A stretch of DNA of 63,184 bases, counting the filler, from Reticulomyxa filosa (lineage: Eukaryota > Protista > Foraminifera): NCBI GenBank assembly GCA_000512085.1. It is 22 parts of 22 records of this genome, joined end to end, with 100 filler letters (N's around TTAATTAATTAA, not from the genome) between each part and the next. Parts side by side here need not be neighbours in the genome. Positions count along the whole stretch, not along the records: positions 1 to 14,524 come from ASPP01022115.1; 21 more parts are not named here. One strand, given 5' to 3'. Below are positions 2,109 through 14,524 of the stretch, one piece after another (within the stretch, counting starts at the first letter, position 1; each line of letters starts with the position of its first letter). A model generated the notes under the pieces. That model saw only the letters and a list, made by a program, of their open reading frames with translations, did no database searches and was not told the DNA's origin. Both the position numbers and the translations under genes were made by a program.

Positions 2109-5100
2109 TCAAAAAGAGTCAACTATATCATAAAAAATAAAAGATACCTCTATTGGTTCCCCATTCAATTGCCTAGCCTTTTGTTTCATGCGCAAGGTAC
2201 GCCAGTAGTATTCTCCTAAGTGCAGGACGTGTTGTTTCCATGCTTCCTCACAAAATTGGAGCGCCTTTTTCTTGTTCCCGTGAGCTTCACATAAAAACAT
2301 TAAGCGTTCAGCTGAACTGCTAATTGACATATCTTTTTGTCCAAATATTTCTTTCTTTATCTTTAGCGAATGTTCAAAATATTCGATTGCTTTTTCATTA
2401 CGTCCAATTCCAGAATACGCATCTCCCAAGCGCTCATACACAACATCAACATCAGAGCTGTTAATACCAAAAATTTCAATTCTGATTTTCAATGCGTTTC
2501 CATAATACTCCAATGCTTTGCTGTGCCAGCTAGAGGGTGCCATTTTGAAATATGTAGTGGCAACATCAGCATGATAAAAACCAAATATATTTAACCTAAT
2601 TTTCAATGCCTTTTCATAATATCCAAATGCATTTCCCGTGTTTTTGAGTTCGTGAAGAGAGGCCAAATTTTGATATGAATTAGCAACTTCGCTGTGACTG
2701 GCTCCAAACATATCGAGTCCCATTCTCAAAGCTTTTTCATAGTATTCAGTTGCTTCTGTGAGCCGGTACTGAGCCAAATGCAAATGTCCGAAATCGTTGT
2801 GTGACTCTATAATTTTTCGGTGCTTTGCTCCAAAAAGAGAGAGTCTAATTTGCAATGCTTTTTTAAAACTGTCCATTACTTTATCGGACATAGATTTTGG
2901 ATAGCTATCATTGCTTTTAGCATAATACACATTACCCAGATCGTGATATGAATCCGCGACATCACTGTGCTTCATCCCAAAAAGATTACGTCTCATTTTC
3001 AATGCCTTTGTATGGGATTCGATTGCTTGGTCGTACTTTCCACTAGCAGCATACACATTTCCTAACTTATTATAGGATGAAGCAACATTGGCGTGATTAT
3101 GTCCAAAAACAAATATATTGATTTGTAATGCTTTTTCATAGTATTCAATTGCCTTGGCATATTGCTTTTTTTTTAAATACACAGTCCCAAAATTATTGTA
3201 CAAATCAGTGAAAGAAATACGACTTTTATCAACAATATTCGATAGAATGTGCAATTCTTTTTCATAGTATTCAAGCGCTTTGCTATAATATCCTTTCATT
3301 AAATATGTATTTCCCAAATTGTCATACGAAGAGCCAATTTTTATGTGCTCCATTCCAAAAAGGGCTATTCTAATGTTCAATGCCTTTTCATGACAGTCAA
3401 TTGCTTTTTCATATTTTTCTTTGACACAGTAGACAAATCCTGCATTGGCGTACGAATCAGCAACATTGTTGTGATTCACTCCAAAAACATCTAATCGTAT
3501 TTTCAACGCTATTTCATATGATTCAAGCGCTTTGTCATATTCCTCTTTTTCAAAGTGAGTGTTCCCTAAGCCATTATACGAATCACTGACTTTACTATGA
3601 CTGGCTCCAAAATAACTGACTCTAATTTTTAATGCCTTTTCATAATAATCATGCGCTTTCTCACACTCCTTTTTGCTGAAATTGGCATTTCCTAAATTCT
3701 GGTATGAAGCCGCAACCTTATCGTGCTTCAATCCGAAAAGATCGACTCGGATTTTCAACGCATTTGCATGATAGTCAATTGCACGATCAATTTGTCCTTT
3801 CACCAAATAAATCTTGCCCAACTTGCTGTACGAAGAAGCGACACTAACGTGATTTGTTCCAAAGATATTTACATTGATTTTCAGTGACTCTTCGTAGAAT
3901 TTGGTCGCTTTGTCATATTGTTCTTTTTTTAAGTGGATATTCCCTAACTGGTAATATACATTTGCCACATCGGCATGACTGTCACCTAAAAGATGGAGTC
4001 TGATTTTCAAAGATTTTTCATAATATTCAATTGCTTTATCATCAATTTTCTTGAAATAGTCATTTCCCAAATCGTAATACAAGTCAGCAATCATGGTATG
4101 ATTATCTCGGAACATATCCAACATAATGTTTAGTGCACGTTCGTGATATTCAATCGATTTGTCAAGCCGCTTTTTATTTGCATAGGTATTCCCCAAGTGG
4201 TGATACAATTGCGCAACAAGCGCATGATTATCTCCATATCTTTTCAATATAACCTTTAATGCTTTTTCAAAATATTCAATAGCTTTGTCATATTGCTTCT
4301 TGGAGTCATGTGTAAGTCCAAGCAAGTTGTATGAAATAGCAACATAAGGATGGTCAAGACCAAATGTATTTACAGAAAGCTGCAAATGTTTTTGCAAATG
4401 AAGAATGGCATCATTATAAAGTCTTTTTTTTGAGCACTGCTCTCCTTTTTCTTCAAAATCTTGGAGTCGTGCCGGGACGTTATAATGCACTTTGGTATTC
4501 CATGGAATGGGTGAAATAGCTTGTTTCAATTGTGAATCAACAATTGCATTTGTCGTAATAAATAGCTGTGACATAATAGTTACATTCCCTTTGCATTGAA
4601 TCTCATTGTCAATTGCATACACATTCCCGGCAATATTTACTTCATTTAAAATTTGCAATTTGCATTTGATCACATACATCCAATATTCACCAAATTGTTG
4701 TTTATTCATCCCATTGTCGTCGTTCATCGACATTACAAATGAAGAATTCGCCCATTCCGCGCTATTATATGCAATCACAATCAATCCCCGCTCCTTTTTA
4801 TTAATCATTTCTTCTGCTATTTTTGCTGCCTCCACATTTGCTTTTCTCCAATTTTTATCACAATATTTCTTCAAATCCAAAGTCGGTGGGATGTCGCTAT
4901 CAGCCTTTGGCTCTGTTTCATCTTTGATTTCGCGATTTCCATTATCTTTACCACTTTGTGGCTGCTTTGATCTTGGGACCAAATAAAGTTCGGAGTGATT
5001 GACAGAAACAGTTTGAGCCACTTCTTTTCTCAACGCCTGGTCAAACACAGTCTCAATGACTTTTTTGACGTTCCAATCAAAGCTTTTATCCATGTTCTTT

Positions 5101-6111
5101 TCAATGCTCTGACAAAAGATGTTGGCAAAATGACTTCCTTTTTGTGCATTTGCACGTTTCGAGTTACCAATGGTCTGTTTTTTAGCAGTGTTTACAAATA
5201 TGGTAAACACATCCACATCCTGACCATACCACACATTTTTTTGCCTCGCATTGTTTGCTCGAGGACTTTTCATTTGCTTATCGTTATCTCTTTCTCCACT
5301 CCACGCGATCTTGATGAATATCTTGGGTTTGCCCGCAAAGTACTCTGTTTTGGTTGCAAACTCGTCTTGAATGTCTTTGATGCCTTTGATCTTGTTATCA
5401 CTTGTGATCAAGGTATCTCTATTGCTGCCAAATCCCCCATGTCCACACCACACAAATATCAACCCATCGTATGGCTGTCCATTGTCGTTGTCGGAACAAT
5501 TCTCTCTCAAATTCGAGCGATGCTTTGACAAAAACTTATTCAACTCATTTAATGTGAGTGACTCCGTATTTGGATTTTGTGGATTGTACGTACTGACTAC
5601 GTGGTAACCCAATTTAAATTCAAATAACATTTGCAATATGTGCAGATCTTGCTTTACATCTTCCAAATACGATTGCTGCTTATATTTCATTGCTCCTGCC
5701 AATAACACCAATGCATTTTTTACTTCGTACGAAAACACTGTTGCTTCTTTTTTTTCTTCTGTCTTTTTCATTTTTTCAATTGCTCCTATTTGTCATTTTC
5801 ACCCCCTTTTTTTTTTTTATTTGCAATTCCATTATGCAATAAAACAGTGTTTTTTTTTTTGTCACAAAAAAAAAACTTGGCCGAAATCGGACAGTAAAAA
5901 ATACTGGGTCCTTTGTAAATGCATCTACTACATTTTGATCAGATTCAACGTCACAACCTTTGCCGTCAATAATTGCCCCTATCACATCTTCAGCATGTGT
6001 CGGCTGAACTGCTAGACTTATTTGCTGTCTTAAGTTTTCGACTGTCAATCCTAGCAATATTATTGTATGCACTTTTGACCCATCATCTATAAATGCTTTG
6101 AATGATGACAT
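2109..6111 (-). CDS. PB1/ubiquitin-like + caspase-fold (C14, catalytic Cys>Trp) + ~18 x 42-aa TPR repeat protein, two exons
   Basis: Exon 1 (6111-5877) joins the 1220-aa ORF in frame through a GT-AG intron at 5876-5786 (..FRP-R-AIEKMKK..). Caspase p20 motifs are GLIFVWCGHG and GKPKIFIKIAWSG; the p10-like part is DVFTIFVNT..KGSHFANIFC..ELYLVP. From ~4470 to ~2150 there are kinesin-light-chain-type TPRs (A.SY.NLG..Y..K..Y.KA.EY.EKAL.I....FG..H). Confidence 0.9.
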
Positions 6112-6299
6112 TTCGTAAAATTAGTATTACCAAAAATTTAAATTATATTTTTTTAAAAATGAATTTGATTATTCCCTTTTGGTTACCCGAAAAGTATTCT
6201 AGTATTGCATGTACAACTTTAGCCACTTTTACTTCTTTTTTCATTAGTTTAAGAGTGTGCGAAAACGCATGCATAATATTTTTAAATATTTAAATTATT

Positions 6300-7540
6300 T
6301 CAAATGATGCAAACTTTGGGTCTTTCAGGCTGTGGCATAAAAAGCATTAAAAATCCCACAAACGAATACGTTTATCATATGATCCAGATATATTGTATTC
6401 ATACCACAGATAATTCCTAATTCATTTGATCCATATTTTGCAATATTCACTCGTTTTTCAATTCAACGAACTGGCCCTTTATTTTAATATACATATTCAA
6501 ATGGTATTATCTCATGATCCAGCACAAATGATCCATTAAATGATGAAAATTCAATGTCATCAACACAACTGATGTGTTTATCAAAAATGAATAGTGATAA
6601 AAGTGTTCGTTGTGGGAAATTTAATCTGGTCAACATATTCAAGTGCCCAATGGACATAAATTTTGTATTATCTGTTGAATATTCATCATTGCCATTTTAT
6701 ATGCTTTTTTATTTGCTTTATTTCATGAATGATCTTTATCAATTTCAGTATTTGTATTAATAAAGGGAAACATTTCAATCACGAATTGTAGTAATTTGAA
6801 TAATTTATCCATCCAATGCTTTTTGTTTAGCCAATTTAGAAATTAATATTAAATTGTCATCTAATGATTTTGATAATTTAATATTTTCATCATCTTTTAT
6901 CAAATCTTTTTTGGTCATATCAATTGACTCTTGTTTGATCAATATCCCCAAAACGAATTGTATTATCTCTTGATCCAGAACATATTACATTTGAATTACC
7001 ATTACCATTCTTTATTACAAATGTAAATATTCAACAGCATGCACATAACGTGTATATCCATTGAACACTTGGATTTGTTGACAAGGTCGAATATCCCACA
7101 AACGAAGACTTTTATCATATTATCCAGATAATATTGTATTCACTAATTTATTTGATCTATATTTTACACTATCTACATCATTATTATGTCCCTTGAATGC
7201 ATTGAATTGTTTGGCTGTTTCATATCCCATATTTGAATAGTTGTATCCCATGGTCCAGAACAAATTGTATATCCATTGCGCCAATCACATTAATATTATT
7301 CATTTTATTATTTTTATTATTATTGTTGCCTTGTAATGATGAAATATCAACATATCAAACATTATTCTTATGTCCATTGAAAAAATGAATGATTTTGATA
7401 TTTGAAATCCCAAAAACGAATGATTTTGTCATGTGATGAAAAACAAATGACATTTTGACGATGATTATGATAATGCTATGACGAAAATTTCACACAAAAC
7501 ACATCATTTGAATGTTTATTGAATGATTGAATTTGTTTCA
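6300..7540 (-). pseudogene. Degenerate WD40-repeat gene(s) of the expanded lineage-specific family
   Basis: Minus-strand pieces KQIQSFNKHSNDVFCVKFSS*HYHNHRQNVICFSSHDKIIRFWDF, TICSGPWDTTI and SGSYDKRIRLWD carry stops and frameshifts. Same family as 62430-63184. Confidence 0.8.
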
Positions 7541-8459
7541 TGAATGGTAAGTCAAAATCAAATTTTTTCAATTTTTTTTGTTAAAAAATATCTACGAACC
7601 TTCAAGTGTTTCAAAATGCATTTAATCTTTTTCTACAATTTTTTGTCAGTTAAACATTTTATCATTTTCTACGACATTAATATTGTGCTTTATTAATTTT
7701 TGTAATTTTTTTTGTTTTTAGCCACTTTGTATTGTTTTACTTTTTTCTTAAAGGTTTTAACGTTGTTTTTACTATTTGTTGTTTGAATGTATGAACTTAT
7801 CATAAGTGCTTTACTATGATTTTTTTTGATGATTTTTGGCAATTGCATTTTGTGTTAATGCACTTTTTAATTTGCATGCATTGTCTATGTTACTATATTA
7901 TCTTGCATTACTTTTAGATTTAAAGTTGTTTAGGCTTTTTGGAAAATATCAAACTTTAAAGAGATATAATTATTATAATTATATCGTTATAATTTTTAAT
8001 TGTAAAATTCATTATTTATTTTTTCGATATTAATTACAAACTTACAGTCTAACATAGGCTGATGCGCAGAAAACTCAAAAAAACTTTATTTTTAAAGAAA
8101 TTATGCTATCTTTGTTGCTTTTCAAATTTTTTTAAATTACAATTACTAATGCAAAAACAAGAAAAAAAAATTCAACGTAAAAATAATACCAAAAAATTTT
8201 AAAAAAAAACAAAAAACCAAATTTACAAAGAAAAAAAAAAGTCAATACAAACATTGGGTGCGGATAGAAGGAATGAAACATGCAGAAATATGTACATAAA
8301 CAAAAAAGAAAGAGTCATAATATTAAGTGACTGCAAATTTGTCAATGATCAAATCAAAGAATATCAAGATATTTTATGCAACCTTGGACACCGGATAAAT
8401 GAAGGAGCAGAAATAATACAACATAGATAAAAACTTTTTCCAAATGTGATCGAAGATCA

Positions 8460-8680: not shown

Positions 8681-9588
8681 TCTTATTCTGGATATCAAGG
8701 AAAATGAATTCAATTTTAAAAACTTAGTGATTGAATTAAGCATGGAATTCCGAGACAAGAGTCAAAGCAGTGCAAGAACTTGTGAAATTTGTAGAAGAAA
8801 CAAAAAGGAAAATCTGAATAATGCAGCAAAGACATAAAAAAGATAAAAAATATAATAAATAAGTTTGCAAAGTTAAATCACTTTCAATTTAATAATATCG
8901 TTTCTATGCTCATTTATTCACACATATCACTAGATAAGCCAAATATTAAAGTTATTACAAATTTTCATAAAGAAGCATAAATATCAATAAAATTCTTAAA
9001 GCTTAGTGCTTATGGCTTATAATTCAATTATGATTTTTGGTTCATATACTAATGATCGTGGGAAATCCGAATCTGAAACCAATAACGAACAGTTTTTAAT
9101 ATCACTTTGTTTGTGTGATCGCAAAAAATGACTGTTTACACTATTCTAAAAAAAATAACAAGAACATATAAAAATTTTTCGTTCAAACCACTTTTATTCT
9201 GTCATGAATTTGAAAAAGAACAACGATACAGCAGTTTACAAAAAAATTAGAAATTGCTTGGTGTCTTGGATGTTATAATCTGTTCAAATAATTTCAATTC
9301 ATCCACCTAACCAAATTATTGGCTAGAAAAGAAATAAAAATTTGAATAACTGTTCTTCGTTTTCAAATGTTTGAAGTGATAGCTAAATTTGCTTTGTTTG
9401 TAATAATTGAATTCTAGACAACTGTATCAAAGAAAAAAATAATAATGCACTCGTGAATTTTAAAAACATGTTCTCATTTAAAACTAATGGCTTGGATTTG
9501 AAAGCAAATTAGTTTTATCCACGTAATGCTCCATTTTGACTCAAAACGTTTGAGAATACTGCTCCTTTCACTTGCTCTGAAGTAATCA

Positions 9589-12500
9589 TCAAACATGTAA
9601 TTTCGGAGCAAATTTGGCTCTATAAGCCTCAACAAGCTCATCACCTCTCGATCTACCAGCGTGTTTAAGAATTGTCGTAGAAACAATATCAATTAATTGC
9701 TCTGAGCCTTGATCTGAATTAATTTGTAATTCTGCACATTTACCACCTGAAGTACGAGCTATTGCTTCAAAATGTCTTTTTGCTTTTTCTCCCACATAGA
9801 AGGCATGCACAGTGATGTTACTTTGTTTCAAGAGGTCAAGTTCTTTCTTATAGTAAGTGGGAATAGAGAATTTCGTGCCTTTCCAACAATGTTCGCCTTT
9901 GATCTGTCTTTTCTTGTCCACTTCCTGTCTTTTATTTGGTGGCATGTCTCCAATCAAAATGACTTGTGAAACGTCTTCTTTTCCGGCTTCTGTGTTGACA
10001 CAAGCAAGTCCAATTTCAATGGCCTCATTTCCCAGTCCATAATCTGCACGAACAGTCTCCATAAACTTACGCAAATTATCAGGTTTCGATTCCCAGGGAG
10101 AAGCTTGCAAAATCATATCTTCAGATGCATTGTAATTGCGATACACCATAAATTGCATTTCAAAACAATCGGGAGGTAATTCCTTATCCTTCAAAATAGT
10201 TGAAATTCTATCAAACATAGTGCAAACTGCATTTTTTGCTTTTTGCAATAAATGTTGCATGGAGCCAGTTGCATCCATAAGCACCACTGTATGTGAAGGT
10301 TTTCTCTCTTCCGCTCCTTTATTTCGCTCACATAATAAGTTTTTCGCTGTACTTGCAAGTCCTTTTTTCACAGATGCAATCAATTTTTCACTCGTTTCGT
10401 GCTCTTTTGCAGCATATTTTACATATTTTTTTTTTGTTCTCAGTGCATTGAGTTTTGAAGAATTCACATCGCTTTGCATTGAGCATTGGATAAAAATTAC
10501 CCGCGTTTACGTGCATTTTCTATTTCTGTTTTGCTTGAAAATTTCTCAAGTGATTTATCACACAATACCAAACTGTAAGAACCAGGTCCTCCTTGTCTGG
10601 CAGTTACGCCCTTTGATTTGTACTTCTTCAGACAACTCTTCAGAAAGAAAGGTTTGAATCACATTGTGGTCCACCATTGGCAGCCATAATTTGATTACGG
10701 ACAAACAAAGTCAGTTCCTCGTCCAAATACTTTGGTGAATAATCCCACTTGACCAGAACTGGTAGCACGCTTGATGAGAGATTCTTTCTCTGCGAACGAA
10801 TTTTCTTCAGTCATTACAAATTGCATCATATTTAATTTCAGAAAAATTTGGTGATTCATAAAATTCCATCAATTGTTTCTTGGTTTCGAAGAACACCAAT
10901 ACAGCTCGCTTTGCTCCTTGCGTTTTTTCAACAAGCCAATTATCAATTTCTTTTTTAAGAGTAATGAAATAATCATTTTCATCCACAATGAAAATGTCTG
11001 CTTTTTCTGTAAAGGCGAGTTGGTTCTTGCTGAACAAAGATGGCATATAAGTATATTTGGAAATATGATACTCTTTCTCCATCACTTCTTGTTCAAGTGT
11101 GCTCAATATCTCCAATGTCCCACTAACACCCATAATGCAATAGAAACTTTTAGGAACCTCAGCATATGAAAAATTTCCAATTTGGAATGAAAGGAATATA
11201 TATATATTGTTTTTTTAAACTTTCAGCACTGATTTTATTTTGTGAATGTTCATGATAACACGCAAATAAAGTCTTGTAACCATATCGAATATCGTAAGAA
11301 ATACCACCTTGTTCTTTGTATCCAATTTTATCATTGCTCACTTGATATCCATGAGACTCAAAAAGCTTTGAACATCACTCAACATATCTTTAATCGCTTC
11401 ATCCAACAATGAATCCCATCCTTTCAATACATTACAACATGTCTTGTATTCATTGGATTGTTTTACATCCTTCAATTTCAAAAATTGAGCTTTTATTATT
11501 CCAAATAAAGTCAATAAGTTTGGTGATGGCATCATGTCGCAATATAGTTGCAGGTGAATAGCAGCTGCCATAAAAGTCTGTGTTGAAAAATACATCAACT
11601 TCATCAATTAAAAGTATCTTTGAACGAATGACCTGCTCTCAACTTCATTAGATTTTTTTTTCTTCATTATCATTACCAGGAAGGATTACATTTTCAACAA
11701 GTTTGCGCACATCACCTCCTTCATTAATAATCCTTTCACAAATCTTGTTGAATGTGCCATAATGAATATGGATCAATTACACCCAAGGTATTGAACATTT
11801 GCTCAAAACTTTTGAAATCTCTGCCACTCAAGTATTCACTGTATGAAGTGCAACTCACATCAAAGCCAAATAATGCCAATACACAACAAGCGACTGCCAA
11901 AGTCACTGATTTCCCTTCTCCTGTCCCGAATTTGAATCAAATGATTTGTCAATCCAGATATTTTCTCTCCAACACCCAACATACGGAATATGGAAATCAC
12001 TTGAGCTGGATGTGGTTGTACCAAATAAGAATTTTGATCTTCAACACCTTTGTGCATCATGATAGTATTGTACGTGTTGAAGTGTCCACAATGCAAAAAT
12101 GTTAGCCATTACTTCGGGGATATTGTGTCGAACACTTGGGTCCCATCTTTCATTCCCTGGTATTTGTTTGATATCACTAGCATATATTCTTGCATTATTT
12201 GCAAATACGCTGAGTTGCTTCGGGTCATTTTTGATTTTGTCCAGATTGTTTTGCACAAATTGGCGATATTTTATATTAAACTCATCATACATTTTCTTTA
12301 ATTTCGATGTATCTATTGAATCATCTTTGACATTAATCTTTTCCAAAACATAGTCAATTCCATGTGTCAGGGTTTTCTGATTGAATAATGCAACAGAAAG
12401 TCCTTTGAATACATTATGCTCAGCGACAATCATCTTACTCACTCCGGTTAATTCTTCTTCCAGTTGTATTGCTGCTAGTGCCGTAATATCGACACCCCCT

Positions 12501-14524
12501 ATTGCTCTTTTTTTTTGGTAAGCAATTAATAGTGCATCAATACGTTTGTTAATGGTTATCTTTAAATTCAAAAAAAAGAATATACGGATATGGCTTTCAT
12601 TTCCACTAAGCGGGGTATTAGGAACTTTGGATGCAAGTCATCAATTGCCTCTTTTTCCAATCGCGTAACTCATGTCTTCACAATGGAGTCAATAATTTCA
12701 ACTTGGGATTTCGCAAGATCTGAAAATATGGCATGTCTCTTCATGGCAAGAAAACACTTGTAACACTGGCTAAGATAGCCACAATCTGAGGAGGTCCCAG
12801 TTGGAATTTTTTCCTATTTTCTTAGCAATATCTTGTATGTCCTTTTCTAATTGTTTTGAACATTCCTCTAGTTTCTCAACGCTTGTGACATGAACTTTGC
12901 ATTGAGACATTTGATGCATGAATTCGAGTTTGTCTTTCATGTCTTGGAAAAACTTATCTCGTTTTGTATCGTTTCCTTTAATAGTGATTTCGTTGAAGAC
13001 TCCTTCCCTGTTTATCTCTCGTATCATCTGTTCCAAATTATTATTAAGAGCAACTTTCGTTTCCGAATACGTCCACAGATCAGAGGGGGTCTGATTTTCA
13101 GGAATACCCCAAGATATCTTTTTTTGTCTAAACGACATTATCTTTTGCAAAAAGGGGGTGTTATCACCAACTTCTTTCATGGAGTCCAATACTTTTTGTA
13201 AGTCATATACATTTCTTTGCTCAAAATCGGCATTGTATTTTTTTTTTTTTTTGCAATAATGCAAAACAGTCGGAAATGTTTTTGTCTAATTCTTTCATTT
13301 TTTCTTCAAAATTGGGTGGTATTAATTCGTTACTTTCGCCTTTCAAGCTCATGCATTCAATAGCCAAAGTCCAGCGCTTTTTCAATTGGCTTTTATGGTA
13401 TTGGCTCCAAACTCACAGCGATTAAATGCATCAAAGCTAGCCACTGTTTTTTTTGTTGCACCTTTTCGACCTGATTGGTGAATGTGACTTGTGCAGCTTT
13501 GAGACAATTATCGAGATCGGGTATTGTTATTTTTGTTGACTTTTTCAAGTTATGCAATTCTTTTAACTTTTTCCAATGCCCTCACCGTATCTTCGTTGGC
13601 CCATTTCTGCTCTATGCCTGCGGTCATGTCTCGAGTCATATATGTTGTGGCAACTTTTGTTTCGACCATCTTTTTTTGATTGGCTGTGCACTTATCTAAA
13701 AATTGATTAATATCGTTCACATTTTTGCTGTCAACTATTTTCGGCTACTGCTCCTGCAGCAATTTCCATTTCATATAATATATATCTTTTTCACTTTGCA
13801 TGATCTCTTCCTCAAGCATATTTTTCATGTGATCAGGTAAAAAAACTATTAATACTGCCCCTACAAAGTCGAATATAAGAACCAATTTCCCATGGATGTA
13901 AAATCACCCACTTTCTCACGAAGCTTCGATCAATTGCTTTCGAATTTTTAGAATAATGTCATTTTTCAATCTCTTTCCATCTATCTTTGTATAGAGCGCC
14001 CTTGTTCATTATTGTGCAAAGTTGTTCGTACATTTCTCTGGGTGGAAATGAAGCATAAGGATTAAACGTGTGTCCAATTAGATGAATACTTGTGTATTTA
14101 TCCACAATTTCTTGTAATTTGTTTTCAATTCTTTTCCCTTAGTTTCTGCATGCACAACTCATGATCGTGTCTCTGTTTCTTTCGTTTCCATTACCCTCTT
14201 GTCCTTTCTTCACATCTCCTTCATTGTCTAAGGGCGCAGGTTCACAATAATCTCCTAAAATATCGACAATCCTTTGAACCAGCGTAATTTTGTTTTTTGC
14301 GCCTCCAAAAAAATTCAAAGTATTCACAGATGCATCGAGTGTGTCCAATACCACTTTCATCCACCTTCCAATGGCAAATTTCGTTTTATCTACTGTTTTT
14401 TTTCAATTTCTCTTTGTGCTACCTCATCCACAAATTGGATTACCAAGTGTCGTGCATTTTTGATATGTCCTAAGTTATCCACCAATTTTGTCACTCTGTT
14501 CAAATCCACTTCGTCCTCCCCCCC
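9589..14524 (-). CDS. Large SecA-like SF2 (DEAD/DEVD) ATPase fused to a C-terminal vWA domain; many frameshifts, 5' end cut by the fragment edge
   Basis: Motifs in order on the minus strand: GTGEGKS (11927-11907), SEYLSGRD, LLIDEVD (DEVD 11605-11594), MGVSGTL, AVLVFFE, FGRGTDF (GRGTD 10724-10710), GGPHVIQTF and QIKGRTARQGGPGS (~10620-10578). The vWA MIDAS LMDATGSM follows at ~10270, then VILIGD. Helical ORF pieces at 12041-14360 lie upstream on the same strand. Confidence 0.8.

What the first reader, a model, noticed from the sequence alone, without database searches (positions are those of the whole stretch)
2109..6111. Receptor-like PB1/caspase/TPR fusion in a protist: candidate single-chain sensor-protease system
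Seen: a ~78-aa beta-grasp-like first exon with an acidic D.KG.DVESDQ motif (PB1- or CIDE-N-like), a caspase fold with both p20- and p10-like halves, ~140 aa of unassigned sequence, and ~18 TPRs. Established: the GKPK.F...ACRG signature and p20/p10 layout are typical of caspases and paracaspases rather than metacaspases, and long 42-aa TPR arrays serve as sensors in fungal NLRs and bacterial CHAT-TPR systems. Inference: oligomerisation domain + protease fold + variable repeat sensor would be an NLR-like death or immunity receptor without a STAND ATPase.
Basis: partly seen in the sequence, partly recalled or inferred. Interest (0 to 1): 0.85.

Follow-up and report, generated by a model that had tools for sequence, protein, structure and literature searches.

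The report
PB1-like, dead-caspase, TPR protein of a foraminifer
This is a real two-exon gene of the foraminifer Reticulomyxa filosa that joins a PB1-like oligomerisation domain, a caspase-related domain and 17 TPR repeats, but the caspase part has lost its catalytic cysteine, so it is most likely a scaffold and not a protease.

Summary
The gene model is right. The minus-strand gene 6111..2109, with a 91-nt intron at 5876..5786, equals GenBank RFI_25648 of Reticulomyxa filosa (1303 aa).

**Confirmed**
- The N-terminal 78 aa fold as a beta-grasp (pLDDT 94). The nearest solved folds are PB1 domains (Z 8.7-9.7) and CIDE-N (Z 8.9).
- Residues 96-348 are homologous to animal caspases. The family profile hits Dronc at 4.5e-7. 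The domain is 41% identical to a paralog that passes Pfam Peptidase_C14.
- Residues 378-528 are a conserved domain with no known fold.
- Residues 553-1267 hold 17 TPR units of 42 aa, of the kinesin-light-chain type.

**Not confirmed**
- There is no ACRG motif. The catalytic cysteine position is Trp240 (TGG, 5303-5301); the histidine is kept.
- In the R. filosa clade, 44 of 49 members on the tree lack an intact His/Cys pair, usually carrying Tyr. Relatives outside the clade nearly all keep the pair.
- Two dead paralogs show dN/dS 0.32 in this domain, so the dead domain is under constraint.
- The repeats average 30% pairwise identity, with no DNA-level tandem repeat and no clear sign of diversifying selection.

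**Verdict**
The gene is a non-catalytic pseudocaspase scaffold from a large lineage-specific family. Reticulomyxa caspase homologs are already published; this architecture and the pseudoenzyme radiation were not mentioned in the papers I could read. An immune or cell-death role is untested.

The parts
2109..6111 (-). Whole gene (CDS with one intron), equal to R. filosa RFI_25648, 1303 aa; stop codon at 2109-2111
5877..6111 (-). Exon 1: N-terminal PB1-like beta-grasp domain (aa 1-78)
   Evidence: Model pLDDT 94.1. VIA Z 9.7-8.7 to PB1 domains and 8.9 to CIDE-N. Foldseek best hit is NBR1 PB1, E 4e-3. Conserved K13 and the acidic residues D49/E56/D58.
5786..5876 (-). Phase-1 GT..AG intron, 91 nt, A/T-rich
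   Evidence: Same position and phase in the paralog locus L001. No RNA run was listed to confirm it.
2109..5785 (-). Exon 2 (aa 79-1303 plus stop)
4977..5735 (-). Caspase-like (C14A-like) domain, aa 96-348, predicted catalytically inactive
   Evidence: Profile against the PDB hits Dronc at 4.5e-7 and caspase-3 at about 2e-4. 41% identical, E 2e-57, to P0025, which passes PF00656. Dyad census.
5439..5441 (-). Codon CAT for His194, the catalytic-His position (retained here; Tyr in most paralogs)
5301..5303 (-). Codon TGG for Trp240, at the catalytic-Cys position (Cys lost)
   Evidence: the direct pairwise alignment puts W opposite C
4437..4889 (-). Family-specific middle domain, aa 378-528: a helix, an alpha/beta part and a short run of beta strands; fold unassigned
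   Evidence: Conserved among 18 paralogs, mean column identity 54%. Model pLDDT 79.6. No PDB or Atlas match: Foldseek E above 0.8, VIA maximum Z 3.9, Atlas TM at most 0.51.
2220..4364 (-). 17 TPR units of 42 aa (aa 553-1267), kinesin-light-chain/NPHP3 type
   Evidence: Pfam TPR_12 2.5e-116, TPR_10 2.6e-88, TPR_NPHP3 200 bits. Unit parsing. PDB hits are LGN/Pins and kinesin light chains. No DNA tandem repeat.

Best explanation
The locus is an intact two-exon gene of the foraminifer Reticulomyxa filosa. It belongs to a lineage-specific family of roughly 50 to 60 or more paralogs at 50% clustering. The family architecture is a PB1-like beta-grasp, a caspase-like domain, a family-specific middle domain and a kinesin-light-chain-type TPR array.

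In this member the caspase-like domain keeps the fold and the catalytic His but has Trp at the catalytic Cys. It also lacks the Asp-pocket Gln and Arg. I therefore read it as a pseudocaspase.

Shown:
- the domain composition;
- the loss of the nucleophile in this gene and in most paralogs;
- purifying selection on such dead domains in a paralog pair.

Inferred:
- the protein works as a non-catalytic scaffold or adaptor;
- the TPR solenoid binds a protein ligand;
- the PB1-like domain makes head-to-tail homo- or hetero-oligomers with paralogs, including the few that keep His and Cys, such as RFI_27043;
- the dead caspase fold serves as a dimerisation or regulatory surface, as pseudo-caspases do in animals.

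The cellular process it serves (immunity or death signalling, or cytoskeletal or cargo scaffolding) is not determined.
For: - Identity and gene model.
- Caspase homology.
- Trp at the Cys position, codon TGG.
- Dyad census across 150 representatives: the WCG[HY]G core family mostly carries Tyr, Trp or Phe at the Cys site and Tyr at the His site, while outer relatives nearly all have His and Cys.
- Tree: the R. filosa clade (49 rows, SH-aLRT 96) has 44 dead and 5 intact members. The subclade holding this gene has 38 dead and 2 intact.
- Constraint on dead domains: dN/dS is 0.32 at dS 0.39 for P0016/P0018, both Tyr/Tyr. Many structural positions are near-invariant.
- PB1-like fold with conserved basic K13 and an acidic D49/E56/D58 cluster.
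- TPRs resemble protein-binding TPRs such as LGN/Pins and kinesin light chains.
- All core-family members I looked up are from R. filosa.
Against: - No expression or splicing data could be obtained; no RNA run was listed.
- Inactivity is predicted from sequence only.
- The window protein has no close paralog, so constraint on this particular copy could not be measured.
- Oligomerisation through the N-terminal domain is inferred from fold resemblance alone. The Z margin over ubiquitin-like folds is only about 2. No Pfam PB1 hit was found, and 4 of 19 members instead hit GRHL1_C weakly.
Confidence: 0.6

Rival explanations
1. One reading: an active single-chain sensor-protease. Ligand binding by the TPRs and PB1-driven oligomerisation would activate the caspase domain, which then cleaves substrates to trigger death or immunity.
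For: The architecture is as proposed. A few paralogs with the same architecture keep His and Cys, for example P0025 with KNACRG. Relatives fuse the same caspase clade to NACHT, Ank, WD40, Kelch, SPRY and jacalin domains.
Against: In this gene the nucleophile is Trp. The Gln and Arg of the caspase S1 pocket align with Ile and Gly (alignment). 44 of 49 members of the clade lack the dyad. The protein gives no Pfam C14 hit of its own.
Confidence: 0.07
2. A decaying, functionless duplicate: a young pseudogene within a repetitive gene family, in which loss of the active site is the first sign of decay.
For: The catalytic residue is lost. The family is large and the genome repetitive and fragmented, with many partial gene models. 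A neighbouring stretch holds WD40 remnants with an in-frame stop. No expression evidence exists.
Against: An uninterrupted 1303-codon frame in DNA of about 35% GC. Structural core motifs of all four domains are conserved across paralogs. Aromatic residues recur at the Cys site instead of a random spread. dN/dS is 0.32 for dead domains in P0016/P0018.
Confidence: 0.1
3. Same non-catalytic scaffold, but the role is cytoskeletal or cargo adaptation, not immunity or cell death. The kinesin-light-chain-like TPRs would tether cargo or motors in the reticulopodial network of this organism.
For: The TPRs are most like LGN/Pins, bacterial and animal kinesin light chains and NPHP3. The repeats are old and not hypervariable, with overall dN/dS 0.44-0.46. 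PB1 scaffolds such as Par6, Par3 and p62 organise polarity and cargo (one search matches).
Against: There is no direct evidence. Large lineage-specific radiations of caspase-related domains joined to repeat arrays are more typical of conflict systems. Relatives carry NACHT, SPRY and lectin modules.
Confidence: 0.2

Closest known systems
Animal caspases (MEROPS C14A; Dronc, caspase-3, caspase-7)
   Same: These are the only PDB family hit by the domain profile: Dronc 4.5e-7 and caspase-3 about 2e-4. The alignment runs from the His strand through GKPK-F to the p10 GS-F..C helix. Intact relatives carry ACRG/DACRG and GHG motifs. Published work already groups Reticulomyxa caspase-like proteins with animal caspases (PMC5982838).
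   Different: Trp replaces the catalytic Cys. The S1 Gln and Arg are not conserved. There is no CARD, DED or death-fold prodomain; the protein has a PB1-like domain instead, plus a C-terminal TPR array of about 950 aa.
Animal pseudo-caspases such as c-FLIP(L)
   Same: A caspase fold retained without the nucleophile and kept under selection. From my own knowledge, not tested here: c-FLIP(L) also carries Tyr at the Cys position and regulates an active paralog by heterodimerisation.
   Different: No DED domains. A different lineage, and a far larger radiation of tens of dead paralogs. No partner has been identified.
PB1 domains (Par6/aPKC, p62, NBR1, MEKK3/MEK5, Bem1/Cdc24) and CIDE-N domains
   Same: A bbabbab beta-grasp with best structural Z of 8.7-9.7. 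A conserved acidic cluster lies on the beta3-beta4/alpha2 region and there is a conserved Lys. This is the pattern such modules use for front-to-back pairing.
   Different: No significant sequence match to Pfam PB1. The best profile hit against the PDB is Bem1 PB1 at E 0.11. The spacing of the acidic motif is shorter than the canonical OPCA motif.
Bacterial and fungal repeat-coupled death or immunity proteins (CHAT/caspase-like-TPR conflict systems; fungal NLRs with TPR, ANK or WD40 repeats)
   Same: An effector-type fold joined to a long TPR array, in a lineage-specific expansion. Relatives swap the repeat module for WD40, Ank or Kelch, and one carries NACHT.
   Different: This protein has no STAND NTPase. 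The effector is dead. The repeats are not highly similar to each other (30% mean identity) and show no recent shuffling. PADLOC models match only the TPR part.
Kinesin light chain / NPHP3 / LGN-type TPR proteins
   Same: 42-aa TPR_12/TPR_10 units; Pfam TPR_NPHP3 at 200 bits; PDB hits to LGN/Pins and KLC1/2.
   Different: The N-terminal 530 aa are unrelated to those proteins.

Membership tests
Peptidase family C14 (caspase-hemoglobinase fold), caspase-like branch | Sequence or profile homology over the p20 and p10 parts of the fold | tested here: met
   The family profile A2 hits Dronc at 4.5e-7 and caspases-3, -7 and -6, with the alignment spanning the His strand to the p10 helix. P0001 aa 96-348 is 41% identical, E 2e-57, to P0025. 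P0025 passes PF00656 at 66.7 bits against a cut-off of 21.4 and hits caspase-7 at 3e-5 on its own. The window protein alone has no Pfam hit.
Peptidase family C14 (active enzyme) | Catalytic His in the G-H-G context | tested here: met
   His194, in VWCGHG, codon CAT at 5441-5439. Most paralogs have Tyr here.
Peptidase family C14 (active enzyme) | Catalytic Cys in the (Q)ACxG context | tested here: not met
   Trp240, in KIAWSG, codon TGG at 5303-5301. It aligns with the Cys of P0025 (KNACRG), P0027 (KIACRG) and caspase-3 (QACRG).
Asp-specific caspases (C14A) | S1 pocket residues: the Gln of QACxG and the Arg of SWR in p10 | tested here: not met
   In the alignment to caspase-3, the Gln position is Ile in this gene and the Arg of SWRN aligns with Gly. 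The third pocket Arg, in the N-terminal part of p20, lies outside the aligned stretch and was not assessed.
Asp-specific caspases (C14A) | Death-fold prodomain (CARD or DED) or a short prodomain, with activation by inter-subunit cleavage | tested here: not met
   The N-terminal domain is a PB1-like beta-grasp, not a six-helix death fold. Cleavage cannot be tested with these tools.
PB1 domain | Beta-grasp fold with PB1 topology | tested here: met
   pLDDT 94.1. VIA Z 9.7 (1wmh), 9.2, 9.1, 8.9, 8.8 and 8.7 to PB1 domains, rmsd 2.1-2.3 A over 71-73 residues. CIDE-N (Z 8.9) and Par3 NTD (Z 9.0) are tied with these.
PB1 domain | Significant sequence match to the PB1 family model, with a canonical OPCA motif or the beta1 Lys | tested here: inconclusive
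   No Pfam PB1 hit for any of 19 members. The profile against the PDB gives Bem1 PB1 only at E 0.11-0.15. An acidic cluster (D49, E56, D58 at 95%) and K13 (84% basic) are conserved, but the spacing differs from OPCA.
PB1 domain | Front-to-back homo- or hetero-oligomerisation | not testable with these tools
TPR repeat proteins (TPR_12/TPR_10, KLC/NPHP3 type) | Tandem helix-turn-helix repeats matching the TPR models | tested here: met
   TPR_12 at 380 bits in 13 stretches, TPR_10 at 288 bits, TPR_NPHP3 at 200 bits against a cut-off of 100. 17 units of 42 aa.
NLR / STAND receptors | Central NACHT or NB-ARC P-loop NTPase | tested here: not met
   No NTPase domain was found by Pfam, NCBIfam or PADLOC. 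The middle domain has no P-loop fold match. One distant relative, P0069, does carry NACHT.
NLR-like hypervariable repeat sensors (fungal type) | Highly similar internal repeats with hypervariable positions under diversifying selection | tested here: not met
   Mean repeat identity is 30% and the maximum 55%. TRF finds no DNA repeat. For the paralog pair P0016/P0018, TPR dN/dS is 0.46; positions 6, 13, 21 and 30 reach 1.1-1.7, but on only 12-13 codons each.

The most novel reading that the evidence does not exclude
Foraminifera may run an ATPase-free, NLR-like surveillance system built from one gene family. In this reading, tens of catalytically dead 'sensor' paralogs, each with its own TPR array, co-polymerise through their PB1-like heads with a handful of catalytically intact paralogs (such as RFI_27043), and so bring active caspase domains together after ligand binding. 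That would be a decoy/executor division of labour analogous to caspase-8/c-FLIP, but evolved independently in Rhizaria.
Probability: 0.15. Interest if true: 0.8.

Novelty: new variant of a known kind. Interest (0 to 1): 0.5.

Why it matters
Caspase-type proteases outside animals are rare. The Reticulomyxa sequences are used as the outgroup for animal caspase trees (PMC10959488, PMC11463336) and as evidence that caspases predate animals (PMC5982838, PMC10565124).

Most of the R. filosa PB1-like/TPR clade studied here is a radiation of pseudo-enzymes, fused to a PB1-like head and long TPR arrays. That changes how those sequences should be read: most of them are not proteases. They are modular proteins whose relatives carry NACHT, SPRY, Kelch, WD40 and lectin modules.

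This gives a concrete, testable system for asking how caspase folds are used for signalling without catalysis in a giant multinucleate protist. It also flags a conserved domain of about 150 aa with no known fold.

Tried and rejected
- **RNA evidence.** No RNA run was listed for 5500-6300, so read laying was not used and the intron rests on annotation and paralog conservation only.
- **Single-sequence search against the PDB.** Searching the N-terminal 324 aa of the ORF gave only chance hits to haemagglutinin HA2 and MCM7 at E above 0.03. I rejected these.
- **Middle domain.** I tried a profile against the PDB (one chance hit, E 0.043), Foldseek pdb (E above 0.8), VIA wide (maximum Z 3.9; bactofilin Z 3.6 over 61 residues, too weak to claim), Atlas by features (none) and Atlas by shape (TM at most 0.51, no coherent family).
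- **N-terminal domain.** Pfam gave no PB1 hit, only weak GRHL1_C hits (4 of 19 members, best 1.9e-4). I noted this but did not adopt it.
- **Other libraries.** PADLOC and NCBIfam gave nothing for the N-terminal 540 aa. The ThiO hit at 19 bits against a cut-off of 250 was rejected.
- **Diversifying selection on the TPRs.** Only one sufficiently close paralog pair was available, and the result is inconclusive. The window gene's nearest paralog is about 50% identical, too far for dN/dS.
- **Handling of the spliced model.** Searches used exon references or the database protein P0001 by id. The two exons were joined only inside one script, to check identity with P0001.
Full report
**Source and gene model**

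The window is contig ASPP01022115.1 of the Reticulomyxa filosa assembly GCA_000512085.1. R. filosa is a freshwater naked foraminifer in Rhizaria.

The minus strand carries a 1220-codon ORF at 5771-2109 and a short upstream ORF starting at 6111. Reading the DNA shows a GT..AG intron at 5876-5786. It is 91 nt, very A/T-rich and in phase 1, and it joins codon 78 of exon 1 in frame to exon 2. The joined product is identical to database protein P0001, which is RFI_25648, 'hypothetical protein', 1303 aa.

The same kind of intron, in phase 1 directly after the N-terminal domain, is present in the locus of a distant paralog, P0025 in L001. The N-terminal domain itself is conserved in 19 paralogs. No public RNA run was listed for the locus, so splicing and expression remain unconfirmed by reads.

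**N-terminal domain (aa 1-78, exon 1)**

An AlphaFold model built on the paralog alignment has pLDDT 94.1 and a bbabbab beta-grasp topology.

Foldseek against the PDB gives only weak matches, led by NBR1 and Cdc24 PB1 domains, ubiquitin-likes, doublecortin, Par3 NTD and CIDE-N (best E 4e-3). The exhaustive VIA search ranks PB1 domains first:
- Par6/aPKC, Z 9.7
- MEKK3, Z 9.2
- MEK5, Z 9.1
- p62, Z 8.9
- NBR1, Z 8.8
- Bem1, Z 8.7

Par3 NTD (Z 9.0) and the CIDE-N domain of FSP27 (Z 8.9) are tied with these. Ubiquitin-like domains follow at about 7.5.

Across paralogs a Lys at position 13 is conserved (84% basic), as is an acidic cluster of D49, E56 and D58 (D58 at 95%). This resembles the acidic/basic pairing surfaces of PB1 and CIDE-N modules.

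Sequence membership in PB1 is not established. No member hits Pfam PB1, the profile against the PDB gives Bem1 PB1 only at E 0.11, and four members weakly hit GRHL1_C, itself a ubiquitin-like dimerisation domain.

**Caspase-like domain (aa 96-348)**

The window protein has no Pfam Peptidase_C14 hit of its own. Three other lines of evidence show the homology:
- Its domain is 41% identical (E 2e-57) to that of paralog P0025. P0025 passes PF00656 at 66.7 bits and hits caspase-7 and Dronc directly.
- A profile of 22 family members hits only animal caspases in the PDB: Dronc at 4.5e-7, then caspase-3, caspase-7 and an ancestral caspase-6.
- That alignment runs from the His strand through GKPK-F to the p10 GS-F..C helix.

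So the fold, with both halves, is confirmed. This agrees with published reports of caspase homologs in Reticulomyxa (PMC5982838, PMC10565124), which are used as outgroups for animal caspase trees (PMC10959488, PMC11463336).

**The active site**

The sequence is GKPKIFIKIAWSGE, with Trp240 (TGG, 5303-5301) at the catalytic Cys position. His194 (CAT, 5441-5439) is kept. In the alignment to caspase-3, the Gln of QACRG corresponds to Ile and the Arg of SWRN to Gly. The Asp-binding pocket is therefore not conserved either.

**The family**

A word-based search found 25 R. filosa paralogs at 33-50% identity, plus one metagenomic caspase-WD40 protein. An exhaustive profile search of 1.84 billion representatives found 699 proteins at E of 1e-3 or better and 61 at 1e-30 or better. 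Every core hit I looked up is from R. filosa.

A census of the two catalytic columns shows:
- The core family, marked by a WCG[HY]G signature, mostly has Tyr at the His site.
- At the Cys site it has Tyr, or less often Trp, Phe, Thr, Ser, Asn, Asp or Glu.
- Only a few members keep both residues: P0025, P0031, P0032, P0042, P0046, P0049 and P0056.
- More distant relatives, with FSGHG...ACRG or DACRG, nearly all keep both.

On a maximum-likelihood tree of 99 near-full-length domains, built with the two catalytic columns removed, the R. filosa clade (49 rows, SH-aLRT 96) has 44 dead and 5 intact members. The subclade holding this gene (40 rows, SH-aLRT 98) has 38 dead and 2 intact. Outside these clades, intact dyads dominate. 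The tree used the quick search and is unrooted, so the order of losses is not resolved.

**Are the dead domains decaying?**

The evidence says no. For the paralog pair P0016/P0018, both Tyr/Tyr, Nei-Gojobori dN/dS in the caspase-like domain is 0.32 at dS 0.39 over 220 codons. The same value is found for P0025/P0038. Core structural motifs (PLVLL.GA, YDGLIFVWCG, ITSDNK, GKPKIF) are near-invariant. The window gene itself has an uninterrupted 1303-codon frame in DNA of about 35% GC. Its own constraint cannot be measured because its nearest paralog is only about 50% identical.

**Middle domain (aa 378-528)**

This stretch is well conserved among paralogs, with a mean column identity of 54%. The model (pLDDT 79.6) shows a long helix, a small alpha/beta unit and a run of short beta strands. 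No significant match was found by any route:
- profile against the PDB
- Foldseek
- exhaustive VIA alignment, maximum Z 3.9; a bactofilin-like beta-helix match at Z 3.6 is too weak to claim
- ESM Atlas by features or by shape

It remains a family-specific domain of unknown fold. It is not a STAND NTPase.

**TPR array (aa 553-1267)**

Pfam gives TPR_12 at 2.5e-116, TPR_10 at 2.6e-88 and TPR_NPHP3 at 200 bits. I parsed 17 units of 42 aa. The closest solved natural proteins are LGN/Pins and the kinesin light chains.

The units are old. Mean pairwise identity is 30% and the maximum 55%, and TRF finds no DNA-level tandem repeat.

For the P0016/P0018 pair, dN/dS over the TPR match positions is 0.46. 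Positions 6, 13, 21 and 30 of the unit reach 1.1-1.7, but on only 12-13 codons each. This is inconclusive and gives no support for the hypervariable, recently shuffled repeats seen in fungal NLRs. Family members do differ greatly in length, from 672 to 1428 aa, although some gene models are partial.

**Relatives with other architectures**

Catalytically intact members of the wider clade are fused to other domains:
- NACHT (P0069)
- ankyrin (P0079, P0092)
- SPRY (P0086, from Bolivina argentea)
- Kelch (P0090, P0113)
- WD40 (P0027; P0158 also has His and Cys)
- a jacalin lectin (P0136)

P0099 also carries WD40 repeats, but it has Thr at the Cys position and so is not catalytically intact.

The named sources among these are the foraminifers Bolivina argentea and R. 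filosa itself, for example ETO01641.1 'caspase 8-like' and RFI_12165. The rest are unnamed metagenome or transcriptome proteins. Within the core family, P0016 and P0018 replace the PB1-like head with a long N-terminal extension; the precomputed Pfam list for P0016 includes Kelch_3.

**Interpretation**

This gene most likely encodes a non-catalytic scaffold with three working parts:
- a TPR solenoid for ligand binding;
- a PB1-like head for front-to-back assembly;
- a constrained pseudocaspase fold acting as an interaction or regulatory surface.

Co-assembly with the few intact paralogs is possible, and is the most interesting reading that remains open. From my own knowledge, not tested here, animal c-FLIP(L) is a precedent: a Cys-to-Tyr pseudo-caspase that regulates an active paralog.

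Whether the family serves immunity or death signalling, or instead cytoskeletal or cargo organisation, is open. No tool available here could decide it.

**Novelty**

Reticulomyxa caspase homologs are published. UniProt already labels several paralogs 'Peptidase C14 caspase domain-containing protein'. In the papers I could search, TPR was not mentioned in connection with them; PMC5982838 has zero occurrences of 'TPR'. I found no description of the PB1-like head, the middle domain or the loss of the catalytic dyad. The literature search is limited to open-access text, and the 2014 genome paper could not be read. I therefore rate this a new variant of a known kind.

**Procedural notes**

Searches used exon references or the database protein by id. 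The exons were joined only inside one script, to compare with P0001.
- Read laying was not used because no run was listed.

Noticed in passing
window 6350-7600, minus strand: Scattered WD40-repeat remnants in different frames, with motifs such as SGSYDKRIRLWD, FKGHNNDV and FNGHKNNV. One stretch has an in-frame stop (7134-7024). The GenBank annotation calls no gene here. It is either a decayed WD40 gene or an intron-rich one. The tblastn E-values are weak (0.17-2).
   Followed up: partly
window 9589-10479, minus strand: A 296-aa ORF with a weak von Willebrand factor A match (PF00092, E 0.007, below the cut-off) and a DxTGS MIDAS-like motif. GenBank annotates a 355-aa product over 9316-10479.
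   Followed up: partly
window 10800-14524, minus strand: A string of minus-strand ORFs (10807-11133, 11338-11607, 12041-12571, 12770-13264, 14139-14360) with no Pfam match. The assembly annotates them as five separate small genes. They may be exons of one larger gene that runs off the contig.
   Followed up: no
P0016 (L003) and P0018 (L004): Two paralogs carry a roughly 330-aa N-terminal extension in place of the PB1-like head, so the head module is exchangeable within the family. The precomputed Pfam list for P0016 includes Kelch_3.
   Followed up: partly
P0069, P0086, P0136 and other outer relatives: Catalytically intact relatives of the same caspase clade are fused to NACHT, SPRY, Kelch, ankyrin, WD40 or a jacalin lectin. 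Several come from the foraminifer Bolivina argentea. This suggests a broad foraminiferal repertoire of modular caspase-like proteins.
   Followed up: partly
A3 members (N-terminal domains of paralogs): Four of 19 N-terminal domains weakly match Pfam PF25416 (GRHL1-like C-terminal domain, best E 1.9e-4) and none matches PB1. This may hint at a closer relation to another dimerising beta-grasp family.
   Followed up: no
P0027 (JGI metagenome, 706 aa): The closest non-Reticulomyxa relative has an intact KIACRG site, two Cys-x2-Cys...Cys-x2-Cys zinc-ribbon-like motifs and a C-terminal WD40 propeller in place of TPRs. Its source organism is unknown.
   Followed up: partly
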